A DNA stretch of 64,000 nucleotides, from the IMG/VR virus record IMGVR_UViG_3300005965_000002, positions 62,001 to 126,000 of that record; one strand, written 5' to 3'. Below, in pieces: positions 1-56,139 of this stretch. The notes below the pieces were generated by a model, which was not told where the DNA came from, made no database searches, and saw only the letters and a list, made by a program, of their open reading frames with translations. Within the stretch, counting starts at the first letter, position 1. The number at the start of each line of letters is the position of its first letter. A program made the position numbers and the translations under genes.

Positions 1-2987
1 GGTATCCTTCGACCGATACCGAAAGCTTTTTCGTGTATCTTTAAGGTTATAGGTGCCTGATTTCTTTTAAATTCGTTTCTTCTAACCATACGACCAATCT
101 GGTGGTAGTCGCTTGCACTCATTTGATTTTGTACCCGCAGTATCTCTGCCCAGTCTTCCCTATATGCTTCTCTTCCTTCAATAAATACCTTTAGTCTCGC
201 ATCTAGAAGAGGATAAGGGGGCAAATTATCAGTATCCTCCTGTCCGGGAGCTAGCTCAGCGGAAGGAGCCTTATTAATGATAGACTCCGGTATTAATTCT
301 TTATTATGAAATTCATTATAGTACCTGGCAAGCTCATAGACTTCCATCTTATAAAGATCACTTAAAGGGGCCAGGCCCCCATTCATGTCCCCGTATATTG
401 TGCAATTATGCGTTTTTACGCCATTTACTGTGTATTCATGGTCTTTTTCTACTGTGAAATCGAACATTTCAACTTCTGTTTCCACAGTTTCTAATTTTTT
501 AATAGCGGCGTAGTATGTCTTACTCTTAATTCTATCTTCCAAAGCAACCGTGATATCACTTTTATTTTTAATTGTATCAAGAAATTTTTTAAGAATACTT
601 CTTCCAATCCACTTACTATTTTTATTTAAGTGCCTTCGAATAGTCCCATTTACCTTCCAATGTGTGTTGTCCTTGATGTGTGATAATTCACAGTGTGTTA
701 TAGGAACAACATCATAGCTGGTTTTTATTTTTTTTGTGTTTTTTGTGTTATTATATAGTCTATTAGCTATACTTTTCTTCAGGATTTTAAAATTTAACAA
801 TTTTTCTGATTCTATTGCCGGTATATACACTTCGTGTAAGTTTTTCCTGGACCTAATATAGGAAACTACCCCCAAATTCAACAAAATTAGATGTAACTTT
901 TCTACTAATTTATAGCTAACACTATGGTATAGGATTTCTGACGTATTTTTGTTACCGTTGCTAGTACTATCTAAAAAAACACCTTCAATGAAAGGTTTTA
1001 CAAGATTTAGCGGGGCTCTCATAATGCACGCCGGTACATCTTTATTATGGGAACCATGTTCAATTCCTAAATGTCTTAAAAAACTGTTAAACTGAACACT
1101 ACATATTTCTATAAAAAAGCAACCTCTTTGGTCTTTTTTTGTAACTTTATACGAGCTTTCTTTTAGCCTTATGCTCTTAAAAAACATTACACAGAAATCA
1201 GAAACATACTTTTTAGAAGTACGTATTCTATAGATACTATCATTTATCCCGGAATAAGAGCCGTCAGCAACACAGATACCTATAAATTTAGATAGATTTT
1301 CATTCAAGTGAGATGGAAAATTAATATCTTGGGATATATAGTCAAATTCTTTTTTTTTGTAAGAAAACGTTATGTCGGTACTTCTGCCCCATATGTTTTC
1401 ACCAAAACTTACTATAGACATGTCTCCTACTTTTAGATTTTTAGCCTCTATAAATTCTTCTTTTCCATTTTTGTGTATCTTTATTTTGTGGTCTTCCGAT
1501 ATCTTTATTATATCCCCAAGTATGTTAGTAATTTTGATAAATCTATTTTTAACATTCCTAAATGAGTGCGTAACAGGCATGTCCTTGATAGAATAGGAAT
1601 TTTTTTCGTCAAAAACGCTACGAGCGCTAATTATGCCATTATCCGTAAATATGTAACTATCTCCATGGACACAATAACCCACGGACATCTCACTTTTGTT
1701 TCCTGTGGAAACTAGTAGATACCCAAATTGGTTAGAAAAAGCCATCAAAAGGAGCCCTCTTATACGGGCTTGCATGTTTTGCCTAGTCAAATCTGCGTCT
1801 GGAAGGTCGCCGACAGCGAAAAGAAAATCAGTGAAAACTTTTTCAAATATCCCTTTGATAGGTAGATTCTTTAGCTCTACTCCCAAGTTACTGCATAGCT
1901 TCTCAGAGTCCGTCACACTTCCTATACTAGAATACTCTGATGGCATTGTTACCGCAAAAACTTTGTCCGGACCAATAGCATCAGCGGCCATAGCTATTGC
2001 AACAGCGCTATCTATTCCTCCTGAGGATCCTATTACGATCCCTTTAAAGCACCCAAGTTTAGAAAAATAGTCATGGATACCATTTTTTATCTGTTCGTAA
2101 AAGAATTTTCCAGGGTTATCTTTGTTAATGGGACGCCTGTCATCCTTAGAAAGAAAATCATCTTGTACGGGGATCCCACCGACAAAAACAGATTCTACAC
2201 ATTGTTCGGAATAACTACCTGCGCGTAAGCAGATGTTTCCATTCTGATCTGTTACAAAGCTGTTGCCGTCGAACACTATGGAATCGTTAGCACCTACTTG
2301 GTTAACGTAAACTATGGGAATACCGTACTTCTTGGCGTTATCAGAAACTATTCTTTCTCTGACCCTACGCTTGTTGATCACTGAAGGAGAGGCGTTAATG
2401 CTGATAATAAGGTCGGCGTTTGCTTTGAAGAGATCTTCTACAGGTTTTTTTGAATAAGATTTATTCTCGAACCAAATATCTTCACAGATCAGTAACCCTA
2501 TACGATTACCATTAAAATTAAAGATTCCGGTTTCATTACCCGGTTCAAAATAGCGTGCCTCGTCAAACACATCATACGTAGGAAGCAGTTGCTTGCGATA
2601 TCTGTAAACAATCTTTCCACTTTCTATAACAAGCGCGGTATTAAAAAGGTTTTTGCCTTTACCTTTATTCTCCTCTATAGCTCCTATTATAATTATACCA
2701 GGAAATGTTTTTACCTCTGATAGTACTCTACTTAGTTCGATTTCATGGTCATGAAAAAAAGAAAAGAAGTCCAGAAGATCAAGGGGAGGATATCCTGCAA
2801 GAGCAAGTTCTGAAAAAACTATACAGTGGCTTTGATCGAAACTTTTATATTTGTGTATGTACTCTTCTATTTTTTGGACATAGCTAATGATCTTGTCCGC
2901 ATTACCTTTTAAATCTCCAACTATAAAATTGAGTTGGGCCATGTGGACGCTTAGCGACTTTTGACTACGATTAGTTGAGATATTCAT
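1..2987 (-). CDS. nadE: Glutamine-dependent NAD+ synthetase, intein-containing, 3' end beyond window
   Basis: Manual translation (not in ORF track): MNISTNRSQKSLSVHMAQLNFIVGD..ELALAGYPP..KQLLPTYDVFDEARYF (nitrilase-like glutaminase domain), then SGGIDSA, NMQARIR, TGNKSEMSVGY|intein|CTIYGDMNGGLAPL, KAPSAELAPGQED. ATG at 2987 overlaps the end of pncB; alternative ATG at 2942. Confidence 0.95.
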   Translation of the reverse strand, partial: MNISTNRSQKSLSVHMAQLNFIVGDLKGNADKIISYVQKIEEYIHKYKSFDQSHCIVFSELALAGYPPLDLLDFFSFFHDHEIELSRVLSEVKTFPGIIIIGAIEENKGKGKNLFNTALVIESGKIVYRYRKQLLPTYDVFDEARYFEPGNETGIFNFNGNRIGLLICEDIWFENKSYSKKPVEDLFKANADLIISINASPSVINKRRVRERIVSDNAKKYGIPIVYVNQVGANDSIVFDGNSFVTDQNGNICLRAGSYSEQCVESVFVGGIPVQDDFLSKDDRRPINKDNPGKFFYEQIKNGIHDYFSKLGCFKGIVIGSSGGIDSAVAIAMAADAIGPDKVFAVTMPSEYSSIGSVTDSEKLCSNLGVELKNLPIKGIFEKVFTDFLFAVGDLPDADLTRQNMQARIRGLLLMAFSNQFGYLLVSTGNKSEMSVGYCVHGDSYIFTDNGIISARSVFDEKNSYSIKDMPVTHSFRNVKNRFIKITNILGDIIKISEDHKIKIHKNGKEEFIEAKNLKVGDMSIVSFGENIWGRSTDITFSYKKKEFDYISQDINFPSHLNENLSKFIGICVADGSYSGINDSIYRIRTSKKYVSDFCVMFFKSIRLKESSYKVTKKDQRGCFFIEICSVQFNSFLRHLGIEHGSHNKDVPACIMRAPLNLVKPFIEGVFLDSTSNGNKNTSEILYHSVSYKLVEKLHLILLNLGVVSYIRSRKNLHEVYIPAIESEKLLNFKILKKSIANRLYNNTKNTKKIKTSYDVVPITHCELSHIKDNTHWKVNGTIRRHLNKNSKWIGRSILKKFLDTIKNKSDITVALEDRIKSKTYYAAIKKLETVETEVEMFDFTVEKDHEYTVNGVKTHNCTIYGDMNGGLAPLSDLYKMEVYELARYYNEFHNKELIPESIINKAPSAELAPGQEDTDNLPPYPLLDARLKVFIEGREAYREDWAEILRVQNQMSASDYHQIGRMVRRNEFKRNQAPITLKIHEKAFGIGRRI
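405..1673 (-). mobile_element. Intein (423 aa) with LAGLIDADG-type endonuclease in NadE
   Basis: Starts CVHGDSYIFT, ends GVKTHN, +1 residue Cys. Removal restores GY-CTIYGD. Internal KFIGICVADG and a degenerate FIEGVFLDS block. Confidence 0.9.
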
Positions 2988-4587
2988 TTTTACCAACGCA
3001 GTGAATGTTCAAGATATGATTAGGATTCTTTCTTTTTCTTTTTATATCTCTGGTAATTACTGTCATCAGATTTTGCTCATACTGAGTATCTTCACACATG
3101 CTTTTTGCCGGGTTATTAGATATCTTGGCGACTGGCTGCAGTTCCTCATAATTTCTGCCACACTCTACCATTTTAATTACAAGCTGTAAGGCTTTTGGTC
3201 CGATGTCGTTTGTAAGGTTAGTCCCAACACCGAAAGCTACGCGAATGCGCCCGCTGAAGTACTTAGCTAGACGAATAACGGTGGGTATATCTAACCCATC
3301 ACTGAAAACTAAGGTTTTCGTCCGGGGATCTATACCAAGATGCTTATAGTGGTCAATTAGCCTGTCTCCCCAAAGAAATGGATTCCCACTATCATGTCGA
3401 GCACCATCAAAAAGTTTGGCAAAATATCTGTCAAAATCAGCGAGGAATTTTTCATCTCCGTAAGTATCAGAAAGAACTATCCCGAGGTCCCCTCGGTACT
3501 CTTTAGCCCAGCTATCCATAACAAACTGCTGCGCGTCAGAAAGCCGGGGACCCAAAGCTTGACCTGCCTGGAAGAGCTCATGAGCCATTGTCCCGATGGG
3601 CTTAAGGTCGTAAAACATAGAAAGCATGACGTTACTGGTACCAGACAATACACCAGCTTCTGCCATTGTACTAACTACTTCTTCATGCCACTCACCACTA
3701 AAGCATCTTCGGGTGCCGAAATCTGATATGATTAATTTCTGTCCTGTTTCGGACTCATATTTTTTAACCATCTGTATCTTAGCTTGGAGTCGTTCCCGGC
3801 CTTCATCTAAGTCGGTATTTTTGTGCAGTGCCCGTGTGTAGCATTCATGTACGATTTTAAGTATTTTTACTTCAAAAGGTATCGTATGAAGCCAGGGCCC
3901 CCGAATGACAATATCGAGTTTTCCGTTTTTCTCTTTTACAGTCACGTACTTTCTGCGTAGATAAAACATACGCAAGAAATCTACGTAATCAGGGGAAAGA
4001 AATTTACATTTCTGTTCAATAAAATTAAGTTCTTCTTCTGTATAAGACAAGTTACATATATGGTCAATCTGCTTTTCTATTTCTTTTTTAAAAGGAAGTA
4101 GATCTACTCCATCGGTACGGCATTTAAAACGCGCCTTCATAACTGCTCTCGAACAGTTATGAAGTATATATTGTTGCATGGAGAGCTTATAGAGATCGTC
4201 ATCTGTCATATATTGGATTACATAGGGATCCCCGTTTTCATCCTTCTTGGCAGAATCATTATATATCTTAGACATAAAAGTGCCTTGGCTGTCACTTTCC
4301 GAGACACAAGTCATGGAAATAAATTCAGCCTCAGGATTGGCTTTTTTGATTTCAGGCATGATTTCAGTTTCCGGATCGGAAACTGGATTTTCGGTTTTAA
4401 CAACGAATGTGTCGATTACCATGCCTTCATGCTTATCAAGTACTTCTTGTATGTGCTCGCTTACGTTTTCAATATCTTCAGACACATTATCTCTAAGCAA
4501 GCTTTTCAGCGAATTGACCAATATATTATGGTCTCTCGTTGCAAAGCCCGAACGGGGCCTGATCCAACAGTCTACTAAGTACCTCAC
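2971..4587 (-). CDS. pncB: Nicotinate phosphoribosyltransferase with ~115-aa unknown N-terminal extension
   Basis: DLYK, DFGTRR, GTSN, GTMAHE (phospho-His), DTY, RHDSG, FSDGL and FGVGTNL motifs. Confidence 0.93.
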   Translation of the reverse strand: MRYLVDCWIRPRSGFATRDHNILVNSLKSLLRDNVSEDIENVSEHIQEVLDKHEGMVIDTFVVKTENPVSDPETEIMPEIKKANPEAEFISMTCVSESDSQGTFMSKIYNDSAKKDENGDPYVIQYMTDDDLYKLSMQQYILHNCSRAVMKARFKCRTDGVDLLPFKKEIEKQIDHICNLSYTEEELNFIEQKCKFLSPDYVDFLRMFYLRRKYVTVKEKNGKLDIVIRGPWLHTIPFEVKILKIVHECYTRALHKNTDLDEGRERLQAKIQMVKKYESETGQKLIISDFGTRRCFSGEWHEEVVSTMAEAGVLSGTSNVMLSMFYDLKPIGTMAHELFQAGQALGPRLSDAQQFVMDSWAKEYRGDLGIVLSDTYGDEKFLADFDRYFAKLFDGARHDSGNPFLWGDRLIDHYKHLGIDPRTKTLVFSDGLDIPTVIRLAKYFSGRIRVAFGVGTNLTNDIGPKALQLVIKMVECGRNYEELQPVAKISNNPAKSMCEDTQYEQNLMTVITRDIKRKRKNPNHILNIHCVGKNEYLN

Positions 4588-4662
4588 ATTAAGCCTCCAA
4601 AAATAAGTAAAGTTTCGAGCGCAAGAGATAATATACTTTTTTAAAATGCCCGGTTTAAAGCA

Positions 4663-5760
4663 TTAACTAAAAAAATTATCTACCGTGTTTACGCACAGAG
4701 TATCGATATCGTTGATATTAGGTGACTTAGGTAGAGTAGATTTCTTATACAATTCTGTGAGTTTTTGGTCACAATCATGGGCATACTGCTCTATTTTGTC
4801 ATATGACCAAGCTCCGTTTCTGATAGCCCGTAGCTCATCAGCATCAATATCCGTACGGTCTACGTTTACCTTTTCGGTTTCTAAGATCTCAAGACCCATC
4901 CTCAAGAGTCGGACCAAGTGTGCGGCGTTTTTAGCGTCAAATCCGTATTTTTCTTCAAGCTCAGCACGAGCCTTATTTCTGGATTTTTTCCATTCATAGT
5001 ATCTATCCCAGTCTCTTTTAGCTTCATAATAGGCAACCTCTTTTTTGGCTTCCTGTACGTATTCCTCTTTGAGGTAATTATCCCCGAGAGATATAAACGT
5101 ATTAGCCTGGGCTTTAATGCCACACTGCAGCCATTCCAGAGCAGTTTTTCTTTGCTCCGGGATCAAAAACTGGGTATACAGAGGAATTACATAATCCCCG
5201 TAAAGCCTGTCTAACTCATCCAAAAAATTCTGTTTCTCTTCTTCTATAATAAATTCCAGAGCGGCACTTACTACTGCTTTAAGCTGAGAAGTCGGAAATA
5301 TTGAGGGATTTCTTAGGCCAAACTCTTCTCTTTCGGGTGATTTTTTAGGAGGATCTAAAAGAAATTTTCTATGGGTTTTTATGCGGTTAAGTTGTGCAAT
5401 TGCATACCCGGAAAAAGTATACCTGCATCTCTTAGTCACGAAGATATCTCTGTTTTCAATAAAAGTATCCCAGTAAGGGCTTCGGGTAATAACACATCTG
5501 TCCGGCATCCATAAAAGATCCATCATATTAGGATTGTTATCGGAAATCAACCTTAGAGCTTTACGGATATCATAGCAAACGCGATCTTTTTCTTCGAACC
5601 CACGAAACTGTTCAAACTTTTGAAATCCGAAAAAATATTCTTTACCTGGAATCATGACGCCTGCTTTATCATAATCTGATTCGGCATGGTGTATACCGTA
5701 AGCTCTGCTGCCTACTACAGTCTCAAATATGATTCTGGGTAATACATAAGAAATTTCCAC
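4663..5760 (-). CDS. Pol-beta superfamily nucleotidyltransferase (Nuc-transf/YcgL/RlaP-like)
   Basis: GSRAYG..SDYD motif, NNPN, C-terminal GFDAKNAAHLVRL..IRNG. Confidence 0.8.
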   Translation of the reverse strand: MEISYVLPRIIFETVVGSRAYGIHHAESDYDKAGVMIPGKEYFFGFQKFEQFRGFEEKDRVCYDIRKALRLISDNNPNMMDLLWMPDRCVITRSPYWDTFIENRDIFVTKRCRYTFSGYAIAQLNRIKTHRKFLLDPPKKSPEREEFGLRNPSIFPTSQLKAVVSAALEFIIEEEKQNFLDELDRLYGDYVIPLYTQFLIPEQRKTALEWLQCGIKAQANTFISLGDNYLKEEYVQEAKKEVAYYEAKRDWDRYYEWKKSRNKARAELEEKYGFDAKNAAHLVRLLRMGLEILETEKVNVDRTDIDADELRAIRNGAWSYDKIEQYAHDCDQKLTELYKKSTLPKSPNINDIDTLCVNTVDNFFS

Positions 5761-5985
5761 TTTATCTTCTCCTTATTTTTGTTATCAATATACTTATCAA
5801 AGCGCTTTAATTAAAGAAAAAGAAAATTTTTATTATAGGATAAAAGTGCTCAATTCTACTTTAATTCTCCAAAAACCTCTGTTATATTAATATGATTTCC
5901 CTACCTTTTTAGGTCTAATAATTCTTTAATACGCCCTCTTGAGTTAAAATAGAGACGGTATAAAATGAAAGGATGTGTTTGAAAA

Positions 5986-8900
5986 ATGTTTAAGACTGCA
6001 CTAGCCTATGAGAATTGGAAAACCAAATATCGGTACGAGAACGAGACCCCCGAAGAAACTTTCCTCAGAGTCGCAAAGGCTCTAGCTTCAGTAGAAAAAG
6101 ACCCTGAATATTGGACTGATAAATTTTATAGAACTCTTGTTAAGCTTAACTCAGAAGGTGAAGCCATAGGCTTAAAATGCACTCCCGGGGGGCGTATTAC
6201 AGCTAATGCGGGAACGGATTTCAAGCATGCAACTCTCCTCAACTGCTACATTTCGGGGGCTGTTTCTAATGCTGAAATAAAATATCCTAGAAAGACCTTT
6301 GATAATAAGCTTGCTCACGATATCGTCTATAAGTCCGATAAAAATCCTGATGATCTTATTAATATATTTTTAACTATTCTGGAGCAAGCTAAAACCCTTG
6401 CTTCTGAAGGAGGGTATGGGATAAATTTTGATTTTATCCGCCCTAGAGGATCCTTAATTAAGGGTACCGGAATAAAGCACCCAGGCGTAGTTAGCTATAT
6501 GAAAATATGGGATTCCGTTTCGGAATGTATAGTAAAAGGTACAAATGATGGGTATATAGATAAACTAAAAAATTACTTAAATAAAGAAGATTTTAATGAT
6601 ACTAAGGAAATAGTAAAATCCATGACCCGTAAGGGAGCTATGATGGGTGTTCTTAGTTGTGTTTCTGGAGACACCTTAATTTCTACCATAGACGGTTTGA
6701 TTCCTATTAAACAATTAGTAGGAAAAAATCCTCTTTTATACTGTACAGGTAAGGATAGAAACATATACGTCAGAAGAGCTAATAAAGTATGGAAGACAGG
6801 AAAAAGAAAAACGCTAAAGATATTATTAGACAATGATACTCATTTGATATGCACTCCTGACCATAGAATTATGCTACATGATGGGTCTTATAAGGAGGCT
6901 AAAGACTTGGTATTAGGAGACTCATTGTCAGCATTCTATAAAAGTATTTATTGTAGAAAAGGTATTTACAAAACAAGTGCTTATAAACAAATAGGTATTA
7001 CTGGTCAAAAGAAAACCATACCTGAGCACAAAGCCGTGTGTGAATTTAAATACGGTATGTACCCCGAGATAGTTGTCGAAGAGGATGGAGTTTCCTATTC
7101 GGATAATAGCCAAGTCATACACCATATAGACGGGAATTCATTAAACAACTCCCCTGACAATATAGAACTTATATCTTTTTCAGAACACGCTGATCGCCAT
7201 AAAGAAGAAACAATAAGAATATTCGATAAAAATAGAAAAAGAATAGCAAAAGAAAGAAAAGGAAAAACTTGGGAAGAGTATTACGGACCAGAAAAAGCTG
7301 CTATTTTAAAGAAGAGAGCCAGTGAAAGAATTAAATTAAAAAGAAAAGGTAGCTGGAATAAAGGTTTAAATGGTGCTAAGTATAAGGAACATTATCAGAA
7401 CGGATTTAAAAATCAGTTTGAAGAGGCCAACACTTGGGAAGAAGCGTATGGTTTAGAGAAAGCTTTATCGGCAAAGAATAAAAAGAAAGAAACTCTTGCT
7501 AAAAATACCCTTAGTAACCATAAAGTAATAAGTGTCTCAGATTATGAAGAAATTGATGTTTTTGATATATCTGTGCCCGATTTTCATAATTTTGTGGCTA
7601 ATGGTATCTTTGTTCATAATTGTAGTCATCCTGATATTGAAGAGTTTATCAGAGCAAAACAATCCTCCGGAGTTTTAACCAAGTTTAACATATCAGTACT
7701 TATAGACGACAAATTCATGGAAGCCGTAAAAAAAGATAAACTCTATGATTTGAGCTTTAATGGCAAAATATACAAAAGGGTAAAAGCTAAAGACTTGTAT
7801 AATATTATCATGGAATCAACATATAATAGAGCGGAGCCTGGAGTTCTTTTTGTTGATAACATGCATCGAAATAATCCGCTATCCTATTTAGGTAAAGCTA
7901 CATGCTGCAATCCCTGTGGAGAGGTGCCGGGTTTGGGCTCTTTAACAACAACATGTTTATTGGGGTCTCTTAATCTTACTCAATATGTATTAGCTTACGA
8001 TAAAGAAACAGGTGCTAAATTAAAGAAACCTATTTTTGATTGGGAACAATACGAAGATGATATAAAAGTATTTACTCGAATGCTTGATAATGTAAATGAT
8101 ATTACTTATAACTCTCTTCCCTCTTATGATTGGGTTACTAAAAACATACGTCAGTTTGGTATGGGGATAAATGGTTTAGGATCTGCTTTATCAATGTTAA
8201 GAATTCCATATAACTCCAATAAATCCCACCAATTTGTTAAAAAAGCTGTATCCATTAAAGAGAATATAACCTGGCAAACTTCAGCTTTGTTAGCAAAAGA
8301 AAAAGGTACATTTCCAGCATATGATAAAGAACAATTTGAATCTACTGAATATTTTAACTCAGATCGCATAATAGACGAAACCCGTGAAATGCTCCGTAAA
8401 TACGGAGCCCGTAATGGAAAGACGACGACAAACCCGCCTCTTGGTAATACCTCAGTAATCTGCGACAATGTATCTAATGGCATAGAGCCTGTCTTCATGC
8501 TTGAGTATGAGCGTAAGGCTATCTGTAAAGATTGGCCTGAGGGTGTAAATGGGGAAAATATTAAAAAGCTCCTCAAGAAATATGATGAGAATGACTATAC
8601 ATATTGGCGGGGTGACATAAACGGAAAGACTTATTATTATGAGCCTCATAATAGAGGATTGTGTGGGGTAACAACAGTCCGCGACTATGGTTATCAATGG
8701 TTACTTGATAATTATCCCGAAGAAGATCATAGCGAGTACCTCGTAACCACAGATAAGCTCACTGTGGATGATCACGTAAACTTGCAGAGTATTGTTCAGT
8801 ACTACTGCAACCAGTCTGTTTCTAAAACTTCAAACCTTCCTTTTGGATATCCTTTTGATGAGTTTAAAGACCTTTATATGAAGGCTTGGAAGAAGGGTTT

Positions 8901-9519
8901 GAATGGTTTCACTACTTATCGTAGCGGATCTATGGAATCTGTTATTTCAGAAATAAGCAAAGCAGAAGAGAGCAAAGAGATTATAGCCCGGGACATAAAG
9001 CTTCCTACTGAATTCGTTAATGGCCCTACTCGGGTAATCAAAAGAGAGCAAATGAAGTTTTACATTCATTTCTCTTATTTACCTGAAGACTCCGAGATGG
9101 TATTCCCGGTTGCTATGTGGATATATACTAATGATAGAAACAAAGATAACTCTCGTATATGTAACAAAGCTTCACGCAATTTGGCTAAGCTGGCGCTAGA
9201 TTGCGGTGTTGATAGGGAAATTGTAGAGAAAGCCCTTGATAAAGCTAAAAAAGATTATCCACATAATAGACTTGGTAGGATGATCTCGCTATGTATGAGG
9301 CATAACGTTAGCCGAGATGATATACTGGTGTCTTTAATGGGTATTGATGGTGATCATATTTCTACACTATTAACTGCCGTACGAAAGTTTATAGGAGAGA
9401 CCATTAAGGATGGTACTAAACTAAAAGGTTACAGATGTGAAGAGTGCAATGGAGATAATGTAATCTTAGAAGGTGGTTGTAAAAAATGTCAGGACTGTGG
9501 CTTTAGTGGTTGTGGTTGA
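5986..9519 (+). CDS. nrdJ: Class II (B12-dependent) ribonucleotide reductase, intein-containing
   Basis: PGGRI, NC, GGYG..F..IRP, HPDIEEFI, EPG, NPCGE, CLLGSLNL, GIEP, QSVSKT, TTYR. C-terminal TSCPD-like domain and CxxC..CxxC ribbon. No beta subunit nearby. Confidence 0.92.
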   Translation: MFKTALAYENWKTKYRYENETPEETFLRVAKALASVEKDPEYWTDKFYRTLVKLNSEGEAIGLKCTPGGRITANAGTDFKHATLLNCYISGAVSNAEIKYPRKTFDNKLAHDIVYKSDKNPDDLINIFLTILEQAKTLASEGGYGINFDFIRPRGSLIKGTGIKHPGVVSYMKIWDSVSECIVKGTNDGYIDKLKNYLNKEDFNDTKEIVKSMTRKGAMMGVLSCVSGDTLISTIDGLIPIKQLVGKNPLLYCTGKDRNIYVRRANKVWKTGKRKTLKILLDNDTHLICTPDHRIMLHDGSYKEAKDLVLGDSLSAFYKSIYCRKGIYKTSAYKQIGITGQKKTIPEHKAVCEFKYGMYPEIVVEEDGVSYSDNSQVIHHIDGNSLNNSPDNIELISFSEHADRHKEETIRIFDKNRKRIAKERKGKTWEEYYGPEKAAILKKRASERIKLKRKGSWNKGLNGAKYKEHYQNGFKNQFEEANTWEEAYGLEKALSAKNKKKETLAKNTLSNHKVISVSDYEEIDVFDISVPDFHNFVANGIFVHNCSHPDIEEFIRAKQSSGVLTKFNISVLIDDKFMEAVKKDKLYDLSFNGKIYKRVKAKDLYNIIMESTYNRAEPGVLFVDNMHRNNPLSYLGKATCCNPCGEVPGLGSLTTTCLLGSLNLTQYVLAYDKETGAKLKKPIFDWEQYEDDIKVFTRMLDNVNDITYNSLPSYDWVTKNIRQFGMGINGLGSALSMLRIPYNSNKSHQFVKKAVSIKENITWQTSALLAKEKGTFPAYDKEQFESTEYFNSDRIIDETREMLRKYGARNGKTTTNPPLGNTSVICDNVSNGIEPVFMLEYERKAICKDWPEGVNGENIKKLLKKYDENDYTYWRGDINGKTYYYEPHNRGLCGVTTVRDYGYQWLLDNYPEEDHSEYLVTTDKLTVDDHVNLQSIVQYYCNQSVSKTSNLPFGYPFDEFKDLYMKAWKKGLNGFTTYRSGSMESVISEISKAEESKEIIARDIKLPTEFVNGPTRVIKREQMKFYIHFSYLPEDSEMVFPVAMWIYTNDRNKDNSRICNKASRNLAKLALDCGVDREIVEKALDKAKKDYPHNRLGRMISLCMRHNVSRDDILVSLMGIDGDHISTLLTAVRKFIGETIKDGTKLKGYRCEECNGDNVILEGGCKKCQDCGFSGCG
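6658..7620 (+). mobile_element. Intein (321 aa) with HNH endonuclease in RNR
   Basis: VLS|CVSGDTLIST ... CTPDH ... FVHN|CSHPDI. Internal HHIDGNSLNNSPDNIEL (HNH). Confidence 0.93.
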
Positions 9520-26820: not shown

Positions 26821-27219
26821 TTATTTTTTTAGATTGGTAATGTTCAGCCCGCTACCGCTGTATATTTTTGAGTGGTTATTTATGAAATCTACAGTTTCAG
26901 GGTCATCTAGATCTCCCCAGAAGCATAGATTGCGTAAAGGGCTCTGCACAATCATTTTTACCTCATCCATGTGGGGGAAATATGAGGAAAAGATAGTTAT
27001 TCCCCCCGGATCACCAAAAGTATACTCGGATCGGAAATACTCCTGTAGAGCTTCAAACATCGGAGACTCATCGTAACCGTGTATAATTTCATTACTTACG
27101 GTTAGGATGACGTGAGGCCGGTCTCCAGCGATAATAACTGCTTTAGATTCTCCTGATTCGCGTATTCTTCCGGATTCGTATACAAGTCTTGCAAAGTAAT
27201 TCCATCTCCGTTCATCCAT
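26821..27219 (-). CDS. Degenerate dCMP/cytidine deaminase-fold protein
   Basis: AVII..N..TIFSSYFPHMDEVKMIVQS matches the TLYxTxxPCxxCxKxIxQS pattern; HAE and PCxxC are absent. Confidence 0.55.
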   Translation of the reverse strand: MDERRWNYFARLVYESGRIRESGESKAVIIAGDRPHVILTVSNEIIHGYDESPMFEALQEYFRSEYTFGDPGGITIFSSYFPHMDEVKMIVQSPLRNLCFWGDLDDPETVDFINNHSKIYSGSGLNITNLKK

Positions 27220-30200
27220 CCTCTGATCCTTTCGTCGAACAGAGTGTTTCTTCTCTGTATCCGATCATTATTAATCGCTTGCTCTATAGCTGATCCTTGC
27301 CCTAAGACCACAACTTTTTTCTTGGCCCTTGTAATGGCGGTATACAAAAGATTTCTCTGAAGAATTCTCTGACCATGGGCGCGTACAATAGGCAGGATAA
27401 TCAAGGGATATTCTAAGCCCTGACTATTATGGGTTACATACCCATTCATCACATATGTATTATCGTGTTCTACCTCAATATCATACATATCTACTTCAGG
27501 TAATTTTTCTACTGATATTACTTTATCATAATTATAATCACTATTGTAATATGTGTTTTCAAACTTATAAAATAAGGAATTACCCTCATTGTGTCCTATT
27601 TGAGGATTTCTCAAAGCGCACAGGTAGTCGCCGTTTTTTATATTTCCCGCTTCTTTAAAGTAGATTCCAGAGGTATTGGCTACAAGGTGCCTATGCTCAA
27701 AACTAGAATCTACAAATGCTCCTGATTTAGTAGTAATTCTATAAACTTCCTTTTTCCCCACATGTACCTTGGATATTACCCTTTTTTTATTATTTTTACC
27801 TGTTAGCACTATATCACCTTTTTTTATGTCAGATAAAGGTATTATCCCTCGTTCAGTAAAGATTTTATTGTATCCAGGAGCGCATTTGTGTACACTTATT
27901 GCATAAGCTAATTTAAGCATATCATCCGCAAGCTTCATGGGGATTTCTACTCGTTTTGTTTTCCCATCAAACTCATCAATATCAATAACAATATTTCCTT
28001 CTACTATTAAAACGACCTTACCAATATCTCCATTAAATACATCTAGGTAGTAGTTGTTCTTTTTGATTAGTACCCGGTCGCCTTTTCGAATTATCATCCG
28101 GTTTAAAGAAACCTCTTTTTTGTTATCTGCTGGAGGGTTTAGCACACTCTGAAGCGCTACGTTAAGCGTTTCTACACTCAGAGGGCCATTATTCCTCGGG
28201 GTGATAATCTGGAAAAGCGTGGGTTCCTTTTTCTTTTTGTTTCCGTCCTTTATATGCTGAGCAAACCGTATGATTGTTTCTTCGATTGTTCCCATATTCT
28301 TTTCACGAAGGAACCATATATCAGCATGCTTATCTCTTTTAAATAGGGAAAGATCCGTATTGCCGTCTCTTATCCTTTTAGCGGCTTTGATGATGTCAGA
28401 CTGCTCTTCCTGCCGGAATATGGTTCTAAGCTGAATGACTTTAAAGCATGCGCAGCTAATTAAGTGCTTAAGTACGGTACCTGGGCCTACAGAAGGTAGC
28501 TGGTCATTATCCCCGACGAACACAATCTTTGTGTGGGAGAATAAGGCAGAAACCAGCCTGAAGAACACCTCCATATCAACCATGGAAGTCTCATCTACAA
28601 TGACTACCTTTGTATTGTACTTATTCAGAGCATGGTAGTCCCATTTATCTCCTTTATACCCTAGCTGTCTGTGTATCGTGCGTGCATCATAATTAGCCGT
28701 TTTAGCCAGCTTTTTAGCAGATATGCCGGTAGGTGTCAGTAGGTCAAAGCTTATATTCTTTCTCACCATGAGTTCTACAAGAGCTTTAACAATTGTTGTA
28801 TTGTGAGTTACTGTGAAATCTCCTAAAACAAATCGACCGTTTCCTGATATTTGAAACCCATAATATTTACCCTTTCCTATGCTTTTAATTTGTATCCCAG
28901 TAACTAGATTATCTTTAATTTGTTTTCTTTCCTCGGCTGTTTTTTTCTTAACCTTCGTTGGTATCTTACATAGACCATTACCAGAAATAGTAGCACGGTA
29001 ATAAGTGCCCTCTCCTGAATAGTATTTCCCTTTACTAAAGCATGAAAAGGATTTTTTGCATGGTTTAGGGTAAGCGCTGAATCCTAATGATCTAGCGATG
29101 AAAACTACATCGTTTAAAAGCTTTTCACTCTTAAATATTATGTCATAGCAGTTTCCTCTTTTATCATAAGATCCATCAGAATCGATTATACCAGCTAAAA
29201 GATTGAGTCTTATTTCTTCGCTGTTGGCCTTATATAAGTGGGGGACAGTTTTTGCTATTGTCAGCCCAGATTCTTGTAGATAATTCCAAAAAAAATTGGG
29301 CTTTCTTTTTCCCTTTAATTCTCCGTATGCTTTTGAATCCATATCACGGGATATGTGGTATTCAATATTATCTCCACTAACTTTTTTTATTGAAATTTCT
29401 GTCCCTCTTAGTATGGTATCGATAGCCTCAACTACTTCGGTAAACGGAGTACTTATTCTTGAGGCGTCTATAGCGCCGTTTCCTAACCACATACCGAGTA
29501 GGTATGGATGTATAGGTATATCTTTTGTTGGAAATTTAACAGGCACTCTGTACCCTTTTAGCCTTTCACGAAAGCTCTTGGCTAAAGAAAAATAAGTGTC
29601 TATGGATATATCGTGTATTTTTCCTTTACCTGACCCAGCATAGGTTGATTGCTTTAGAGAGAGAATATGAGACCTATTTACGACGTACTTATCTCCCTTT
29701 TTAGGAATAACTTCAAAAAGTTCTTCTTCCCCAGTCGCCGTGGAAAGAACTACCCTGGGGGTAGAGTCATCCCCCATCAGAACATCGTTTGTCTTTATAT
29801 CTTGAACTTCTTTAATTGTACCATCATACATTAGAACGGGTGTCCCGTAGCCTAAGCATTTACCTGTACCCGGGGAGCCTGTAATCACCATTACTTTTTC
29901 TTTTGTGAAAGATCTAATAGATTCTTTTTGATCCTCACTAAGATCCATGTGGTGGGCTTTTTCGTACTCGGATATAAATTCTTCTACGTTGAAATCCCCA
30001 AAATCGCACTCATCGTGCTTATCATAGATTTTCTTAAGTAGCCTGGCACTTTCATTTTCATAGAAAAACATGTTTATGTCGTAGTACCGGTTTTCGTCCT
30101 GGTAAATAAAGCCATCCTTTACCAGTCCTTCTATATGAGGCTCTATCTCAGAAAAAAGAACAACACCATTTTTGAATGGGTACTCAGAACTTTTATTGTA

Positions 30201-30920
30201 ATCATTGAATAGCTTGCTGATTTCAGCAGGCTGCAGGAACAGGTGTCCGGACTGCATACAGCTACGAAGCATAAAAAGGATAAAGTATCGGTATCTTAGC
30301 GGGTCCTGCGGAGATTTGCCTAGTTTGTGCGCCAGGTAATCGCAAGTGGTGAATCCGAATCCTTCAAAGCTTAAAAGATAGGGATTCTGCTTGATGACTA
30401 ATTCGGCATTGTAGCTATATTTCGATATGATTTTTTCTATTTTGAACTTAGAAAGCCCGAGGCTATGGAGGAATACTTTTACGGATTTTAACTCTTTATT
30501 TTCCTTCCACGCCTCAACAATATTTTCTACTATTTTTTCGCCTATACCCTCGATCTCAGTTAATCTTTCCGGGGTATTTTCAATGATATCTTCTATATCT
30601 TCTTTCTTAAAGTGCTCCGCTATGTCTCGGGCTCTTTCGGGTCCAATCCATTTTGCGATGGACTGTAAGTAGAGATAAATTCCCTGTAGTGAGTTATCGT
30701 GTGCGAAGGTATGGCTGAGAGCTTTGAATGTCATCCCGTATTTAGGGTGATTGAAGAAATCACCATGCACATCTACCATAGCGTTAGGTAGAAGATTTGG
30801 GAAAGAACCGGAAACCGAAATCCTAGCTCCGTCTTTCTGCGCAAGTATAAAAATTTTGAAGTCACCGTCTTGCGATTCAAATTTTATTTTGTTTACTTTT
30901 CCGGTGATAGTTTCCATCAT
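27102..30920 (-). CDS. recD2: RecD2-like SF1B helicase with two inteins
   Basis: HhH repeats, GSPGTGK|T, PTG.SA, TIHR, DETSM, VGD.DQLPSV, RQ, NGDIG, HK|SQG.EY, LLYTAITRAK. Confidence 0.93.
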   Translation of the reverse strand: MMETITGKVNKIKFESQDGDFKIFILAQKDGARISVSGSFPNLLPNAMVDVHGDFFNHPKYGMTFKALSHTFAHDNSLQGIYLYLQSIAKWIGPERARDIAEHFKKEDIEDIIENTPERLTEIEGIGEKIVENIVEAWKENKELKSVKVFLHSLGLSKFKIEKIISKYSYNAELVIKQNPYLLSFEGFGFTTCDYLAHKLGKSPQDPLRYRYFILFMLRSCMQSGHLFLQPAEISKLFNDYNKSSEYPFKNGVVLFSEIEPHIEGLVKDGFIYQDENRYYDINMFFYENESARLLKKIYDKHDECDFGDFNVEEFISEYEKAHHMDLSEDQKESIRSFTKEKVMVITGSPGTGKCLGYGTPVLMYDGTIKEVQDIKTNDVLMGDDSTPRVVLSTATGEEELFEVIPKKGDKYVVNRSHILSLKQSTYAGSGKGKIHDISIDTYFSLAKSFRERLKGYRVPVKFPTKDIPIHPYLLGMWLGNGAIDASRISTPFTEVVEAIDTILRGTEISIKKVSGDNIEYHISRDMDSKAYGELKGKRKPNFFWNYLQESGLTIAKTVPHLYKANSEEIRLNLLAGIIDSDGSYDKRGNCYDIIFKSEKLLNDVVFIARSLGFSAYPKPCKKSFSCFSKGKYYSGEGTYYRATISGNGLCKIPTKVKKKTAEERKQIKDNLVTGIQIKSIGKGKYYGFQISGNGRFVLGDFTVTHNTTIVKALVELMVRKNISFDLLTPTGISAKKLAKTANYDARTIHRQLGYKGDKWDYHALNKYNTKVVIVDETSMVDMEVFFRLVSALFSHTKIVFVGDNDQLPSVGPGTVLKHLISCACFKVIQLRTIFRQEEQSDIIKAAKRIRDGNTDLSLFKRDKHADIWFLREKNMGTIEETIIRFAQHIKDGNKKKKEPTLFQIITPRNNGPLSVETLNVALQSVLNPPADNKKEVSLNRMIIRKGDRVLIKKNNYYLDVFNGDIGKVVLIVEGNIVIDIDEFDGKTKRVEIPMKLADDMLKLAYAISVHKCAPGYNKIFTERGIIPLSDIKKGDIVLTGKNNKKRVISKVHVGKKEVYRITTKSGAFVDSSFEHRHLVANTSGIYFKEAGNIKNGDYLCALRNPQIGHNEGNSLFYKFENTYYNSDYNYDKVISVEKLPEVDMYDIEVEHDNTYVMNGYVTHNSQGLEYPLIILPIVRAHGQRILQRNLLYTAITRAKKKVVVLGQGSAIEQAINNDRIQRRNTLFDERIRGWMNGDGITLQDLYTNPEEYANQENLKQLLSLETGLTSS
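27426..27884 (-). mobile_element. Mini-intein (153 aa) in RecD2 motif V
   Basis: SVHK|CAPGYNKIFT...YVTHN|SQGLEY; no endonuclease. Confidence 0.92.
28800..29858 (-). mobile_element. LAGLIDADG intein (353 aa) in RecD2 Walker A
   Basis: GTGK|CLGYGTPVLM...VTHN|TTIV; LLGMWLGNG and LLAGIIDSDG. Confidence 0.95.
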
Positions 30921-55600: not shown

Positions 55601-56139
55601 GATTTGTTGAGAAAGATGAGTTTGGAAGAGAGCGGTTGATTTATCCTAAGCTGTCCTTCACGAGACTCGCTATTAAGGATAATGATGTTTATTTTGACCA
55701 GGTAAATCAGCTATATCAGAAGGGTTCGGTATCAGTAGATGTTATCTTGGATATGCTTGGTATTGATCCTGACGCTACAAAAGAAAAAATTGAAGCGGAT
55801 CTATTCACTGTTAATGACGCCTCCTTTAACGCTTTTATGCAGTCCCTATACACCGCTGTCGGATCTGACTTCTTCCAAAAGTATGATGTTGAAGGGGCTC
55901 TGGCTAAGTATCTCAGGATACCGGAGCTTGTGCAGCCTGCCGGAGAAGAAGAAGGAGGTTTAGGCGGAGCAGGTCTGGGAGGCGGACTAGGCGGAGGAGA
56001 AGCTCGGTTTGCTTCAGAAGATACTTCTGATATGACAGAGAGAAGGAAGGCGGCATTGCAGAAATTGATGAAGATAGCTATCAAAAACCCAGATAAACTG
56101 GATAAGCTAGCTCAAATTTTCGACCGTAAGAGAATATAA
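52696..56139 (+). CDS. Portal protein, intein-containing
   Basis: FVGSAIDLHS..P, EYWLMGN, HLARK..Y..G.SIL pattern; ~650 aa after splicing; lies between terL and the protease. Confidence 0.8.
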   Translation: MAGRKTGNKGTTPKTTVTKTASEDLTVQEVRGVKPTMKLTDKEKQVRALKKYATTSFGFGSRVSSMYGNTMLSNEGNFYSPQLSTDFLEKPQNLRERRAWYRHFYNSNEFVGSAIDLHSTLPLSKVKLEKPKCKNPKMAQYVYTFFEDMCQDMRLFKVLTEISHEYWLMGNCLGKNSKLRCVDSYKKAVDVSVGDYVLTHEGRFRRVKNKFSRYSEKITNIEMWKTYKKLDLTEEHPVEVYRNGKFEFIEVKDLTEDDYIRVTWVKDIDDVKTINYLESFKNLDITESGYTKETNIKRKRAKKSHECRLKMLFWLSNLTEPVIKSRDDIAFDLNVERKTLDNVLTQLNKEFGKSRYSRRIGASNYQKGSRVEWLPFKYSDVDSCYEIKRIENFTTPHTVDIDEDFCYLLGYWIGDGTISRDNSRKNIWGRAIWNIVFGDSSDKQKEKIYRILQEKIGIQCIKEWDSYRDCGDGKVSKLSTVKIKSNPAFVEWWANNFGETTKGDNRKKIPLWVSKLPLNKLYALIAGLVDSDGCISNGVCDISLSSESLISSIQEILLKCNIVPNINKKEGTKGTGVLNNNGKIYSDVYKVVFKARDFSSFVGNYSIKGAKYSDIKQEKPYLSKYIITDNGDIAFKVKKITESEYNDMVFNFEVEEDHTFQVEGFSTHNCFPFAEDHDPYDGDEQTVAHLKEEGRQRAEYLWENFKVRDKDPNYKGWRKIIILPPDQVRVRNVLLSDQESIIEFMPDPETKKLIMGEGLGRVYGYSESMQISEMEKNISVPEKMRDQIREGGSIPLDTDPYTGSHVYHLARKKSQYETLGVSILERCINTLLFADKIRQAQTSIASRHMTPIRIVWAEELNEADVEALREQVDLALVDPDYSIITNYQVNWEEMGSNGRLLELSTEYEHIENSLFAGLNVTREILTGEGSYSGSRITLEVMNRIYLLFRDSIQEYIENYLFKPVAHKKGFVEKDEFGRERLIYPKLSFTRLAIKDNDVYFDQVNQLYQKGSVSVDVILDMLGIDPDATKEKIEADLFTVNDASFNAFMQSLYTAVGSDFFQKYDVEGALAKYLRIPELVQPAGEEEGGLGGAGLGGGLGGGEARFASEDTSDMTERRKAALQKLMKIAIKNPDKLDKLAQIFDRKRI
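53209..54702 (+). mobile_element. LAGLIDADG intein (498 aa) in portal
   Basis: LMGN|CLGKNSKL..LTEEHP..STHN|CFPF; LLGYWIGDG and LIAGLVDSDG. Confidence 0.93.

What the first reader, a model, noticed from the sequence alone, without database searches (positions are those of the whole stretch)
405..1673. Intein inserted in the NAD synthetase substrate-binding motif
Seen: a 423-aa Cys...His-Asn intein splits the conserved GNKSExxxGY-xTxYGD motif. Established: inteins mostly occupy replication, recombination and packaging proteins, so a cofactor-biosynthesis enzyme is an unusual host. Inference: retention implies NadE is under selection in this phage. Cys at both junctions could make splicing redox-sensitive. 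The second LAGLIDADG block looks degenerate.
Basis: partly seen in the sequence, partly recalled or inferred. Interest (0 to 1): 0.7.

Follow-up and report, generated by a model that had tools for sequence, protein, structure and literature searches.

The report
Mobile intein splitting phage NAD synthetase
A large phage from salt-lake microbial mats carries a self-splicing, probably still mobile protein insert (an intein with a homing endonuclease) in the active site of its NAD synthetase gene. It is a real intein of an ordinary kind, in a host enzyme and at a site that I could not find described.

Summary
Window 405-1673 (- strand) is an uninterrupted 423-aa class 1 intein (Cys1, SEDH block B, Asp405, His-Asn end, Cys+1). 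It lies inside a glutamine-dependent NAD+ synthetase gene of a tailed jumbo phage (258-kb record, hypersaline lake and mat metagenomes). It sits between the NaAD-contacting Tyr and the next residue of the synthetase active site.

The AF2 model (pLDDT 88) matches LAGLIDADG homing-endonuclease inteins (TliVMA, PI-PfuI, PI-SceI). The same site is occupied in 11 other metagenomic NadE proteins (31-53% intein identity), mostly on phage-like contigs. Close syntenic relatives have the site empty.

None was found in GenBank phages, GTDB species genomes, other IMG/VR contigs or the paper library.

The claim that the second LAGLIDADG block is degenerate is not supported. Both catalytic Asp residues are kept and conserved family-wide.

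Two phage haplotypes have near-identical inteins (0.5% different). They differ by 12-16%, almost all synonymous changes, in the ~60 bp of extein on each side. This looks like a co-conversion footprint of recent homing.

The redox idea is untested and non-specific: Cys+1 is the native NadE residue.

Verdict: a new member (new host and site) of a known kind; moderate interest.

The parts
1..2942 (-). nadE precursor CDS (glutamine-dependent NAD+ synthetase with intein). ATG at 2940-2942; an alternative upstream TTG lies at 2994-2996. The last 8 codons and the stop lie 25 nt beyond the window's left edge.
   Evidence: (988-aa database call)
2202..2882 (-). N-terminal CN-hydrolase (glutaminase) domain. 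Catalytic Glu63 (2808-2810), Lys135 (2592-2594) and Cys171 (2484-2486) are invariant among homologues.
1674..2099 (-). N-extein part of the NAD synthetase (PP-loop ATP pyrophosphatase) domain, including SGGIDS at 2007-2024. It ends ...STGNKSEMSVGY.
405..1673 (-). 423-aa class 1 intein: HINT splicing domain, nested LAGLIDADG homing endonuclease and a helical accessory region. GC is 31.0%, against 38.6% for the genome.
1635..1673 (-). Intein block A (CVHGDSYIFTDNG); Cys1 codon at 1671-1673.
1488..1499 (-). Intein block B, SEDH (the TxxH-type motif; His62 is invariant).
1257..1289 (-). First LAGLIDADG helix, block C (KFIGICVADGS); catalytic Asp137 at 1263-1265.
1041..1043 (-). Invariant Lys211 of the endonuclease block D (NKxVP).
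966..995 (-). Second LAGLIDADG helix, block E (PFIEGVFLDS); Asp235 at 969-971. It aligns with the block E Asp of the active TliVMA endonuclease.
405..467 (-). Intein blocks F and G (MFDFTVEKDHEYTVNGVKTHN): Asp405, His422 and the terminal Asn423.
1..404 (-). C-extein (CTIYGDMNGG...); the +1 Cys codon is at 402-404. It continues beyond the window edge.
1683..1734 (.). N-extein flank in which the second natural haplotype differs at 10 positions within the 61 bp (1674-1734) next to the junction. Nine are synonymous third-position changes; two of the ten share the Tyr426 to His codon.
339..399 (.). C-extein flank in which the second natural haplotype differs at 8 positions within the 66 bp (339-404) next to the junction, all synonymous.
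2971..4587 (-). Upstream neighbour: nicotinate/nicotinamide phosphoribosyltransferase (NAPRTase). With nadE it forms a phage NAD module.

Best explanation
The segment is a class 1, Cys1/Cys+1 intein with a nested LAGLIDADG homing endonuclease. It is a selfish mobile element lodged in the synthetase active site of a jumbo phage's glutamine-dependent NAD+ synthetase.

Inferred mechanism. The gene is translated as a ~1000-aa precursor whose active-site strand is interrupted. The Mg-binding Glu and the NaAD-contacting Tyr are separated from the Thr/Asp half of the motif. The HINT domain then splices by the standard route: N-S acyl shift at Cys1, trans-thioesterification by Cys+1, cyclisation of Asn423 assisted by His422, then an S-N shift. 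This yields a ~565-583-aa NadE with the native ...GY-CTIYGD... sequence, plus a free 423-aa endonuclease.

When an intein-free nadE allele meets this phage during co-infection, the endonuclease cuts the empty site. Repair copies the intein in, together with some tens of base pairs of flanking extein.

The intein has been associated with phage nadE genes for a long time. It still appears to be moving.
For: Shown:
- Open 423-aa frame with Cys1, SEDH (His62), Asp405, His422-Asn423 and Cys+1. All are invariant in 12 NadE inteins and 2 terminase inteins.
- Pfam and NCBIfam intein and LAGLIDADG hits.
- AF2 model with pLDDT 88.4 and pTM 0.88. Best Foldseek matches are homing-endonuclease inteins: TliVMA 7qss (E 1.5e-22, TM 0.72), PI-PfuI, PI-TkoII and PI-SceI.
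- Both LAGLIDADG Asp residues (137, 235) and the block D Lys211 are conserved. Asp235 aligns with the Asp of the active TliVMA enzyme.
- The same GY|C(S)T site is occupied in 11 other NadE proteins.
- Syntenic relatives exist with the intein (373-kb contig) and with an empty site (46-kb contig).
- The extein tree forces at least 4 gains or losses.
- NadE inteins form one clade. That tree conflicts with the extein tree (AU p = 0.03).
- Intein GC is 31.0%, against a genome mean of 38.6 +/- 3.1. Only 0.3% of equal-sized windows are as low.
- The window haplotype and a second haplotype (runs X3, X4, X6) differ by 6 of 1269 nt in the intein (all six at third codon positions; four synonymous, two changing an amino acid: H768Q, K775N) and by 0.6-0.9% in distal extein. 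They differ by 8 of 66 and 10 of 61 nt in the extein directly next to the two junctions (Poisson p ~1e-12). A third run shows a recombinant haplotype.

The splicing chemistry and the homing mechanism are inferred from the established behaviour of class 1 LAGLIDADG inteins.
Against: - No experiment: neither splicing nor DNA cleavage was observed.
- Block E lacks the final Gly of the textbook motif (LDS, not DG/ADG).
- No intein-free allele of this same strain was seen in the laid contigs. Contigs drop rare variants, so this says little either way.
- The haplotype evidence rests on metagenome contigs, which can switch between co-occurring strains.
- The tree incongruence is marginal (p = 0.03) and involves long branches.
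- Low GC is also typical of homing-endonuclease genes generally. It need not date the acquisition.
Confidence: 0.85

Rival explanations
1. The intein splices but is no longer mobile. Its endonuclease is dead and it is now inherited only vertically with nadE.
For: - Block E reads FIEGVFLDS, not the LAGLIDADG consensus.
- The LAGLIDADG_3 Pfam score is modest (25.5 bits).
- Intein and extein divergences are correlated (r = 0.60), which fits much vertical descent.
Against: - Both catalytic Asp residues and the block D Lys are retained in all 12 alleles, at 31-53% identity.
- The inactive comparator PhoVMA has lost these Asp residues and a helix turn. The active TliVMA aligns with ours.
- The endonuclease part is as conserved as the enzyme (mean identity 38% against 41%).
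- Distribution among syntenic relatives is sporadic.
- There are co-conversion-like flank tracts around a near-identical intein.
Confidence: 0.12
2. Conditional protein splicing. A reversible Cys1-Cys+1 disulfide (or another intein Cys) holds the precursor inactive under oxidising conditions. The intein would then act as a redox switch on phage NAD+ synthesis.
For: - Cys is present at both 1 and +1.
- There is precedent for oxidant-inhibited inteins: M. smegmatis DnaBi1 forms an intramolecular disulfide at its catalytic Cys and is reversibly inhibited (PMC6195587).
- The product, NAD+, is a redox cofactor, and the habitat is oxic-to-anoxic mats.
Against: - Cys+1 is simply the native NadE residue, found in 77 of 117 intein-free homologues.
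- One NadE intein allele works with Ser+1 (P0021).
- No extra conserved Cys or CxxC-type feature was found among the invariant columns.
- Nothing here distinguishes this intein from the many Cys1/Cys+1 inteins with no known regulation.
Confidence: 0.06
3. The interrupted nadE is a dead gene. The insert cannot splice, so the phage makes no active NadE.
For: No direct evidence of splicing. No NadD/NMNAT (PF01467) was found in the 258-kb record to complete a Preiss-Handler route.
Against: - The frame is open over 1006 codons.
- All splicing residues and all NadE catalytic residues are intact and invariant across 12 diverged alleles: the E-K-C triad, SGGxDS, and the Glu, Thr and Asp of the split motif.
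- Differences between natural haplotypes are mostly synonymous (24 of 29 changed positions, 5 amino-acid changes).
- The record is only ~55% complete, and the host can supply NadD.
Confidence: 0.03

Closest known systems
TliVMA intein (Thermococcus litoralis V-ATPase A subunit; PDB 7qss) and related archaeal LAGLIDADG inteins (PI-PfuI 1dq3, PI-TkoII 2cw7)
   Same: Same three-part architecture: a split HINT domain, a two-motif LAGLIDADG endonuclease and an accessory region. Best structural match (E 1.5e-22, TM 0.72) and the only PDB sequence match (E 7e-8). Block C and block E Asp residues align. Similar size (429 against 423 aa). Both sit in an ATP-using enzyme's active site.
   Different: Only 16-18% sequence identity. 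Different host protein (NadE against V-ATPase), a bacterial virus against a hyperthermophilic archaeon, and a different homing site. Endonuclease activity is shown for TliVMA and only inferred here.
Phage terminase large-subunit inteins (metagenomic P0008 and P0009; mycobacteriophage TerL inteins of PMC5050341)
   Same: Nearest non-NadE sequence relatives (23-28% identity). P0009 shares the CxHxxSYIFTDNGII N-terminus. They are phage-borne class 1 LAGLIDADG inteins in ATP-using proteins. Mycobacteriophage TerL inteins were shown to splice, and some to cleave DNA.
   Different: Different extein and site. The NadE inteins form their own clade with 100/99 support. The host is a metabolic enzyme, not a packaging enzyme.
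PI-SceI (yeast VMA1 intein), the textbook homing intein
   Same: Class 1 splicing residues, LAGLIDADG endonuclease, and homing into the empty allele with co-conversion of flanks (established knowledge). Structural match in Foldseek (E ~1e-8 to 1e-10).
   Different: TM only ~0.45-0.5 and 9-10% identity. Eukaryotic nuclear gene with meiosis-linked homing.
Redox-responsive inteins (M. smegmatis DnaBi1, PMC6195587)
   Same: A catalytic Cys1 that could in principle be trapped in a disulfide.
   Different: No evidence here of a partner Cys under selection. The +1 Cys is the native extein residue, and one family member has Ser+1.

Membership tests
Class 1 intein (HINT splicing domain) | Cys/Ser/Thr as first residue (block A) | tested here: met
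   Cys1 at window 1671-1673; invariant in 14 aligned inteins.
Class 1 intein (HINT splicing domain) | Block B TxxH-type motif with conserved His | tested here: met
   S59-E-D-H62; His62 invariant.
Class 1 intein (HINT splicing domain) | Block F Asp, and block G penultimate His plus terminal Asn | tested here: met
   Asp405, His422 and Asn423, all invariant.
Class 1 intein (HINT splicing domain) | Nucleophile (Cys/Ser/Thr) as first C-extein residue | tested here: met
   Cys+1 (402-404). Eleven of 12 alleles have Cys and one has Ser. Cys is native in 77 of 117 intein-free NadE.
Class 1 intein (HINT splicing domain) | In-frame insertion at a conserved site; removing it restores a continuous homologue alignment | tested here: met
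   PDB homologues 5kha and 4f4h, and intein-free P0018 and P0020, align straight across the junction.
Class 1 intein (HINT splicing domain) | HINT fold | tested here: met
   AF2 model with pLDDT 88. The terminal beta-rich segments (1-110 and 385-423) and the whole model match solved inteins. This is a predicted structure only.
Class 1 intein (HINT splicing domain) | Autocatalytic protein splicing | not testable with these tools
   Needs expression and a western blot or mass spectrometry of ligated exteins.
LAGLIDADG homing endonuclease (two-motif, monomeric) | Two LAGLIDADG helices, each ending in an acidic catalytic residue | tested here: met
   Block C ...GICVAD137GS and block E ...GVFLD235S. 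Both Asp residues are conserved in 12 NadE inteins and align with TliVMA. The block E sequence departs from the consensus.
LAGLIDADG homing endonuclease (two-motif, monomeric) | alpha-beta-beta-alpha-beta-beta-alpha fold duplicated around the two helices | tested here: met
   Foldseek also matches free-standing I-DmoI, I-SceI and I-Tsp061I over the central ~190-210 residues (TMt 0.6-0.7). Predicted model only.
LAGLIDADG homing endonuclease (two-motif, monomeric) | Site-specific cleavage of the intein-free allele; homing | not testable with these tools
   Indirect support only: sporadic distribution among syntenic relatives and flank-restricted divergence around a near-identical intein.
Glutamine-dependent NAD+ synthetase (NadE, PRK13981 type) | CN-hydrolase glutaminase domain with the Glu-Lys-Cys triad, fused to a PP-loop (SGGxDS) synthetase domain | tested here: met
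   NCBIfam PRK13981 scores 556.6 bits, above the 479 cut-off, despite the insert. E63, K135, C171 and SGGIDS are present and invariant.
Glutamine-dependent NAD+ synthetase (NadE, PRK13981 type) | Synthetase active-site residues (Mg-I Glu; ATP-ribose Thr and Asp; NaAD Tyr and Thr) | tested here: met
   T431, E436 and Y441 on the N-extein; T866 and D870 on the C-extein. These match Table S4 of PMC3376133.

The most novel reading that the evidence does not exclude
The intein is not only selfish. It is also a post-translational gate on a phage NAD+-replenishing module (NAPRTase plus NadE). Splicing would respond to redox state, or to another infection-specific condition, through the Cys1/Cys+1 pair sitting in the NaAD/ATP pocket. 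Active NAD+ synthetase would then appear only at a defined stage, for example when host NAD+-depleting defences fire.
Probability: 0.06. Interest if true: 0.7.

Novelty: new member of a known kind. Interest (0 to 1): 0.4.

Why it matters
- It adds NAD+ synthetase, a coenzyme-biosynthesis enzyme, to the list of intein hosts. It defines one insertion site (GY|CT in the NaAD/ATP pocket), shared by at least 12 diverged alleles that sit mostly on phage-like contigs.
- It fits the published view that inteins prefer ATP-using active sites, and extends that view beyond replication and packaging proteins.
- It offers a natural system for studying homing. Occupied and empty alleles lie in the same genomic context. 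Two near-identical phage haplotypes, sampled over several years, appear to carry co-conversion tracts, so homing could be studied in wild jumbo-phage populations.
- Practically, it is a new Cys1/Cys+1 intein with a probable rare-cutting endonuclease.
- It does not change the understanding of how inteins work.

Tried and rejected
- Megablast of window 1-6000 against GenBank phages found no match.
- Literature searches for intein with NAD synthetase/NadE, and for inteins with jumbo phages, found no paper describing a NadE intein. Supplements of the main intein survey are not held, and InBase could not be consulted, so 'undescribed' is provisional.
- Scans of IMG/VR and of GTDB species genomes with the intein profile found only ~25%-identical inteins in other hosts: a RecA-like ATPase and a RecD-like helicase. 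Both scans rely on a single back-translated peptide pattern, so they are not exhaustive.
- tblastn against 50,697 phage records found NadE in about 9 records, all intein-free. The intein part matched only distant terminase, helicase and polymerase inteins.
- Laying contigs of 8 runs on the gene showed no intein-less joint. Contigs cannot show absence.
- The recent NAD+ reconstitution papers (NARP1-3) do not mention NadE. The counter-defence role of the module is therefore only an inference.
- I considered and rejected a non-intein domain insertion or a bacterial intein-like (BIL) domain, because all class 1 blocks and a nucleophilic +1 residue are present.
- I rejected assembly artefact, because the junctions are bridged in independent samples.
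- I rejected an alternative genetic code, because the frame is open in table 11.
Full report
**1. What is in the sequence**

The finding's coordinates are exact.
- On the - strand, window 405-1673 reads through 423 codons without a stop. It starts with Cys and ends with His-Asn.
- It lies inside one long ORF, window 3..2996 (-), which runs off the window's left edge.
- The window is bases 62001-126000 of a 258,580-bp IMG/VR virus record. That record has no terminal repeats, and CheckV rates it about 55% complete.
- In the record the ORF is complete: 1006 codons from a TTG. The protein database calls the same gene from the ATG 18 codons downstream, at window 2940-2942, giving 988 aa.
- I number residues from the TTG start.

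**2. The host protein**

- Pfam finds CN_hydrolase (residues 39-265, 3.7e-20).
- Pfam also finds NAD_synthase (1.1e-60), broken into two stretches on either side of the insert.
- NCBIfam's equivalog model for glutamine-dependent NAD+ synthase (PRK13981) scores 556.6 bits, above its 479 cut-off, despite the interruption.
- Solved intein-free homologues (5kha, 4f4h) align up to ...STGNKSELSVGYC. They resume at CTLYGDM... with nothing missing.
- Removing the 423 residues therefore restores a normal NadE of about 565-583 aa.
- The glutaminase triad (Glu63, Lys135, Cys171) and the PP-loop SGGIDS are present. They are invariant among homologues.

**3. Where exactly the insert sits**

Table S4 of De Ingeniis et al. 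(PMC3376133) lists the active-site residues of solved NAD synthetases. The Streptomyces avermitilis enzyme happens to share our numbering:
- Thr (ATP ribose) and Glu436 (Mg-I) lie upstream.
- Tyr441 contacts the NaAD nicotinate-ribose.
- Residue 442 (backbone) and Thr443 contact the nicotinic moiety.
- Asp447 contacts the ATP ribose.

The intein lies between the Tyr441 equivalent and the residue 442 equivalent. The precursor has its catalytic strand cut in two, with 423 residues in between.

The +1 Cys is not an intein adaptation. Among 117 intein-free NadE homologues that matched the motif pattern, this position is Cys in 77, Ala in 18, Ser in 12 and something else in 10.

**4. It is an intein with a homing endonuclease**

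*Sequence.*
- The excised segment scores above Pfam's Intein_splicing cut-off (44.5 bits against 35.8) and above LAGLIDADG_3 (25.5 against 22.5).
- It hits the intein parts of NCBIfam models for intein-bearing GyrA, V-ATPase A, IF-2 and DnaB.

*Conserved residues.* In an alignment of 12 NadE inteins and 2 terminase inteins, these columns are invariant:
- Cys1;
- His62, in S59-E-D-H62 (block B);
- Lys211 and Pro214 (endonuclease block D);
- Asp405 (block F);
- His422 and Asn423 (block G).

*Structure.*
- An AlphaFold2 model built on that alignment is confident (mean pLDDT 88.4, pTM 0.88).
- Its best Foldseek matches in the PDB are all homing-endonuclease inteins:
  - TliVMA 7qss (E 1.5e-22, TM 0.72);
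  - PhoVMA;
  - PI-PfuI;
  - PI-TkoII;
  - PI-SceI.
- The central part alone also matches free-standing I-DmoI, I-SceI and I-Tsp061I.

**5. The 'degenerate' second LAGLIDADG block**

- Block C is a good motif: KFIGICVAD137GS.
- Block E reads PFIEGVFLD235S, which is further from the textbook consensus.
- In the HMMER alignment to TliVMA, Asp137 and Asp235 fall on the two Asp residues of ...LIADGT... and ...IVCDGY....
- Beyer et al. (PMC8966425) showed that TliVMA cuts its homing site. The degenerate PhoVMA intein has lost those Asp residues and a turn of the block E helix.
- Here both Asp residues, and the whole of block E (F-[IL]-x-G-[VL]-x-[LM]-D-S), are kept in all 12 NadE inteins at 31-53% pairwise identity to ours.
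- The intein as a whole is about as conserved as the enzyme around it (mean pairwise identity 38% against 41%).

This is not what decay looks like. I rate the endonuclease as probably active, unproven.

**6. The site is shared, and sporadically occupied**

*Occupied alleles.*
- A word-indexed search of 5.8 billion proteins found three more NadE proteins with a related intein.
- An exhaustive HMMER search of 1.84 billion cluster representatives found more.
- In total, 11 other full-length NadE proteins (P0005-P0007, P0010-P0016, P0021) carry an intein at exactly the same place...G-Y | C-[VI]... [VT]-H-N | [CS]-T-[IL]....

*Their contexts.*
- Where enough contig is available, the context looks like a large phage genome.
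  - There are many small ORFs without Pfam hits.
  - NAD-related neighbours include NAPRTase, NUDIX, NAD kinase and a MazG-nucleotidyltransferase fusion.
  - One contig also carries CRISPR-Cas genes.
- One allele lies on a 373-kb contig. Its gene order is RNR - amidase_2 - dUTPase - RlaP - ... - NAPRTase - NadE - ... - patatin, which matches ours.
- A 46-kb contig has the same order, a NAPRTase of the same 538-aa length, and an intein-free 570-aa NadE.

*Trees.*
- On an extein tree of 67 sequences, our NadE falls in a well-supported group of five intein-bearing alleles and that one empty allele.
- The intein label needs 6 changes on that tree, and at least 4 are forced by starred branches.
- The NadE inteins form one clade relative to their nearest outside relatives, which are terminase inteins (100/99 support).
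- Inside that clade, the inteins of P0007 and P0010 group with those of distant NadE genes, not with ours.
- The AU test rejects the extein-like grouping only marginally (p = 0.03).

Together this is the usual picture for a homing intein: one origin at one site, long residence, and occasional loss and lateral spread.

**7. It is not catalogued, as far as I could check**

- No paper in the library pairs inteins with NAD synthetase.
- The main survey (PMC4760082) reports 61.5% of bacterial intein hosts in replication/repair and 21.7% in nucleotide metabolism. Other categories are 'considerably less represented'. The survey also reports a preference for ATPases. NadE is an ATP pyrophosphatase, so it fits that second rule.
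- In 50,697 GenBank phage records, NadE occurs in about nine. Examples are Agrobacterium phage Atu_ph07 and a 595-kb uncultured phage. It is always intein-free.
- Pattern scans of GTDB species genomes and of IMG/VR found only ~25%-identical inteins in other proteins.
- InBase and the survey's supplements were not available to me.

**8. Evidence for recent movement**

*Composition.*
- The intein is a compositional outlier: 31.0% GC, against 38.9% and 41.8% for the two exteins. The genome mean is 38.6 +/- 3.1.
- Only 0.3% of equal-sized windows in the record are as low.

*Occurrence.*
- The gene occurs in hypersaline-lake and microbial-mat metagenomes from 2017 to 2024.
- Contigs from independent runs bridge both junctions. 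X4 has one 1832-bp contig across the whole intein.

*Two haplotypes.*
- Runs X3, X4 and X6 carry a second haplotype.
- Its differences from the window are distributed as follows:

| Region (window coordinates) | Differences | Percent |
|---|---|---|
| C-extein, distal (1-338) | 2 of 338 | 0.6% |
| C-extein, next to junction (339-404) | 8 of 66 | 12% |
| Intein (405-1673) | 6 of 1269 | 0.47% |
| N-extein, next to junction (1674-1734) | 10 of 61 | 16% |
| N-extein, distal (1735-2071) | 3 of 337 | 0.9% |

- All six intein differences are at third codon positions.
- In the two flank clusters, 16 of the 18 changed positions are synonymous. The other two share one codon, which changes Tyr426 to His.
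- Eighteen differences in 127 bp, at the overall rate, has a Poisson probability of about 1e-12.
- Run X7 combines the window-type C-flank with the second haplotype's intein markers.

*Reading.* The simplest explanation is gene conversion tied to the intein. The same intein entered near-identical nadE backgrounds more than once, or with co-conversion tracts of different length, or the flanks were later re-converted.

*Caveat.* These are assembler contigs, which can switch strains. Read-level phasing is needed.

**9. The redox idea**

- Oxidant-sensitive inteins exist. An example is M. smegmatis DnaBi1 (PMC6195587).
- Any Cys1/Cys+1 pair is close in space by necessity.
- Nothing here singles out this intein, for three reasons:
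  - Cys+1 is the ancestral NadE residue.
  - One allele has Ser+1.
  - No further Cys is invariant.
- It remains a cheap experiment, not a finding.

**10. Whether NadE is under selection**

- The extein's catalytic residues are invariant over 12 diverged intein-bearing alleles.
- Differences between natural haplotypes are mostly synonymous: 24 of 29 changed positions are silent, and five amino-acid changes result.
- This supports purifying selection on the gene.
- The intein's presence does not by itself show that. An intein in an active site can only be lost precisely, so it persists as long as the gene matters.
- The gene sits next to a NAPRTase. Jumbo phages are known to carry NAD+ synthesis genes, interpreted as protection against NAD+ limitation (PMC7824862).
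- No NadD/NMNAT was found in the 55%-complete record.
- A role in countering NAD+-depleting defence is inference only.

**11. The phage**

- It is a tailed phage: large terminase, portal and head maturation protease were found.
- The record is unusually rich in inteins.

**Verdict**

This is a canonical class 1 LAGLIDADG intein in a new host enzyme and at a new site. It belongs to a small phage-associated family and probably still homes. It is a new member of a known kind, of moderate interest.

Noticed in passing
window 5986-9519 (+); 27102-30920 (-); 52696-56139 (+): The record is very intein-dense. The ribonucleotide reductase carries an HNH-type intein. The RecD2-like helicase carries two: a LAGLIDADG intein in the P-loop (GTGK|C) and a mini-intein. 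The portal protein carries a LAGLIDADG intein. With NadE that makes five well-supported inteins in 64 kb.
   Followed up: partly
outside the window: genome 151773-153305 (+), 167218-169329 (+), 246121-250020 (+): Three weaker intein candidates: a 510-aa protein of unknown function, an actin/MreB-like protein (ATS|CLTPG...IHN|CGAG) and DNA polymerase I. The last one appears to end ...KN|T without the penultimate His. Scores were below Pfam's cut-off.
   Followed up: no
window 1-4587 (-), with L001 1-1472; loci L014 and L016: There is a conserved module: RNR - amidase_2 - dUTPase - RlaP - NAPRTase - NadE - small genes - patatin-like phospholipase. It is shared with a 373-kb and a 46-kb metagenomic contig. 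The relatives differ in which genes carry inteins: the dUTPase has one in L014 and not in L016, and the RNR is 1186 aa against 1617 aa. The whole lineage looks like an intein incubator.
   Followed up: partly
window 339-399 and 1683-1734, versus 405-1673: Runs X3, X4 and X6 carry a second haplotype. It differs by 12-16%, almost all synonymous, only in the ~60 bp of extein next to each intein junction. The intein and the distal extein differ by less than 1%. Run X7 shows a recombinant of the two.
   Followed up: partly
whole record (G000): No NaMN/NMN adenylyltransferase (PF01467) was found to link NAPRTase to NadE. The record is only ~55% complete. A relative (L023) has a MazG-CTP_transf_like fusion near its nadE, and others have NUDIX and NAD kinase genes nearby.
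   Followed up: partly
window 2971-2996: The NAPRTase ORF's 3' end overlaps the longest nadE ORF by 26 nt. With the database's ATG start at 2942 there is no overlap, so the true nadE start is uncertain (TTG 2996, ATG 2987 or ATG 2942).
   Followed up: no
loci L014 (21472-22578), L016 (17889-19028), L025 (2622-4137): Related phage contigs carry IS605/TnpB (Cas12f1-like_TNB) elements and several DUF559/HNH genes close to the NAD module. These are further signs of heavy mobile-element load.
   Followed up: no
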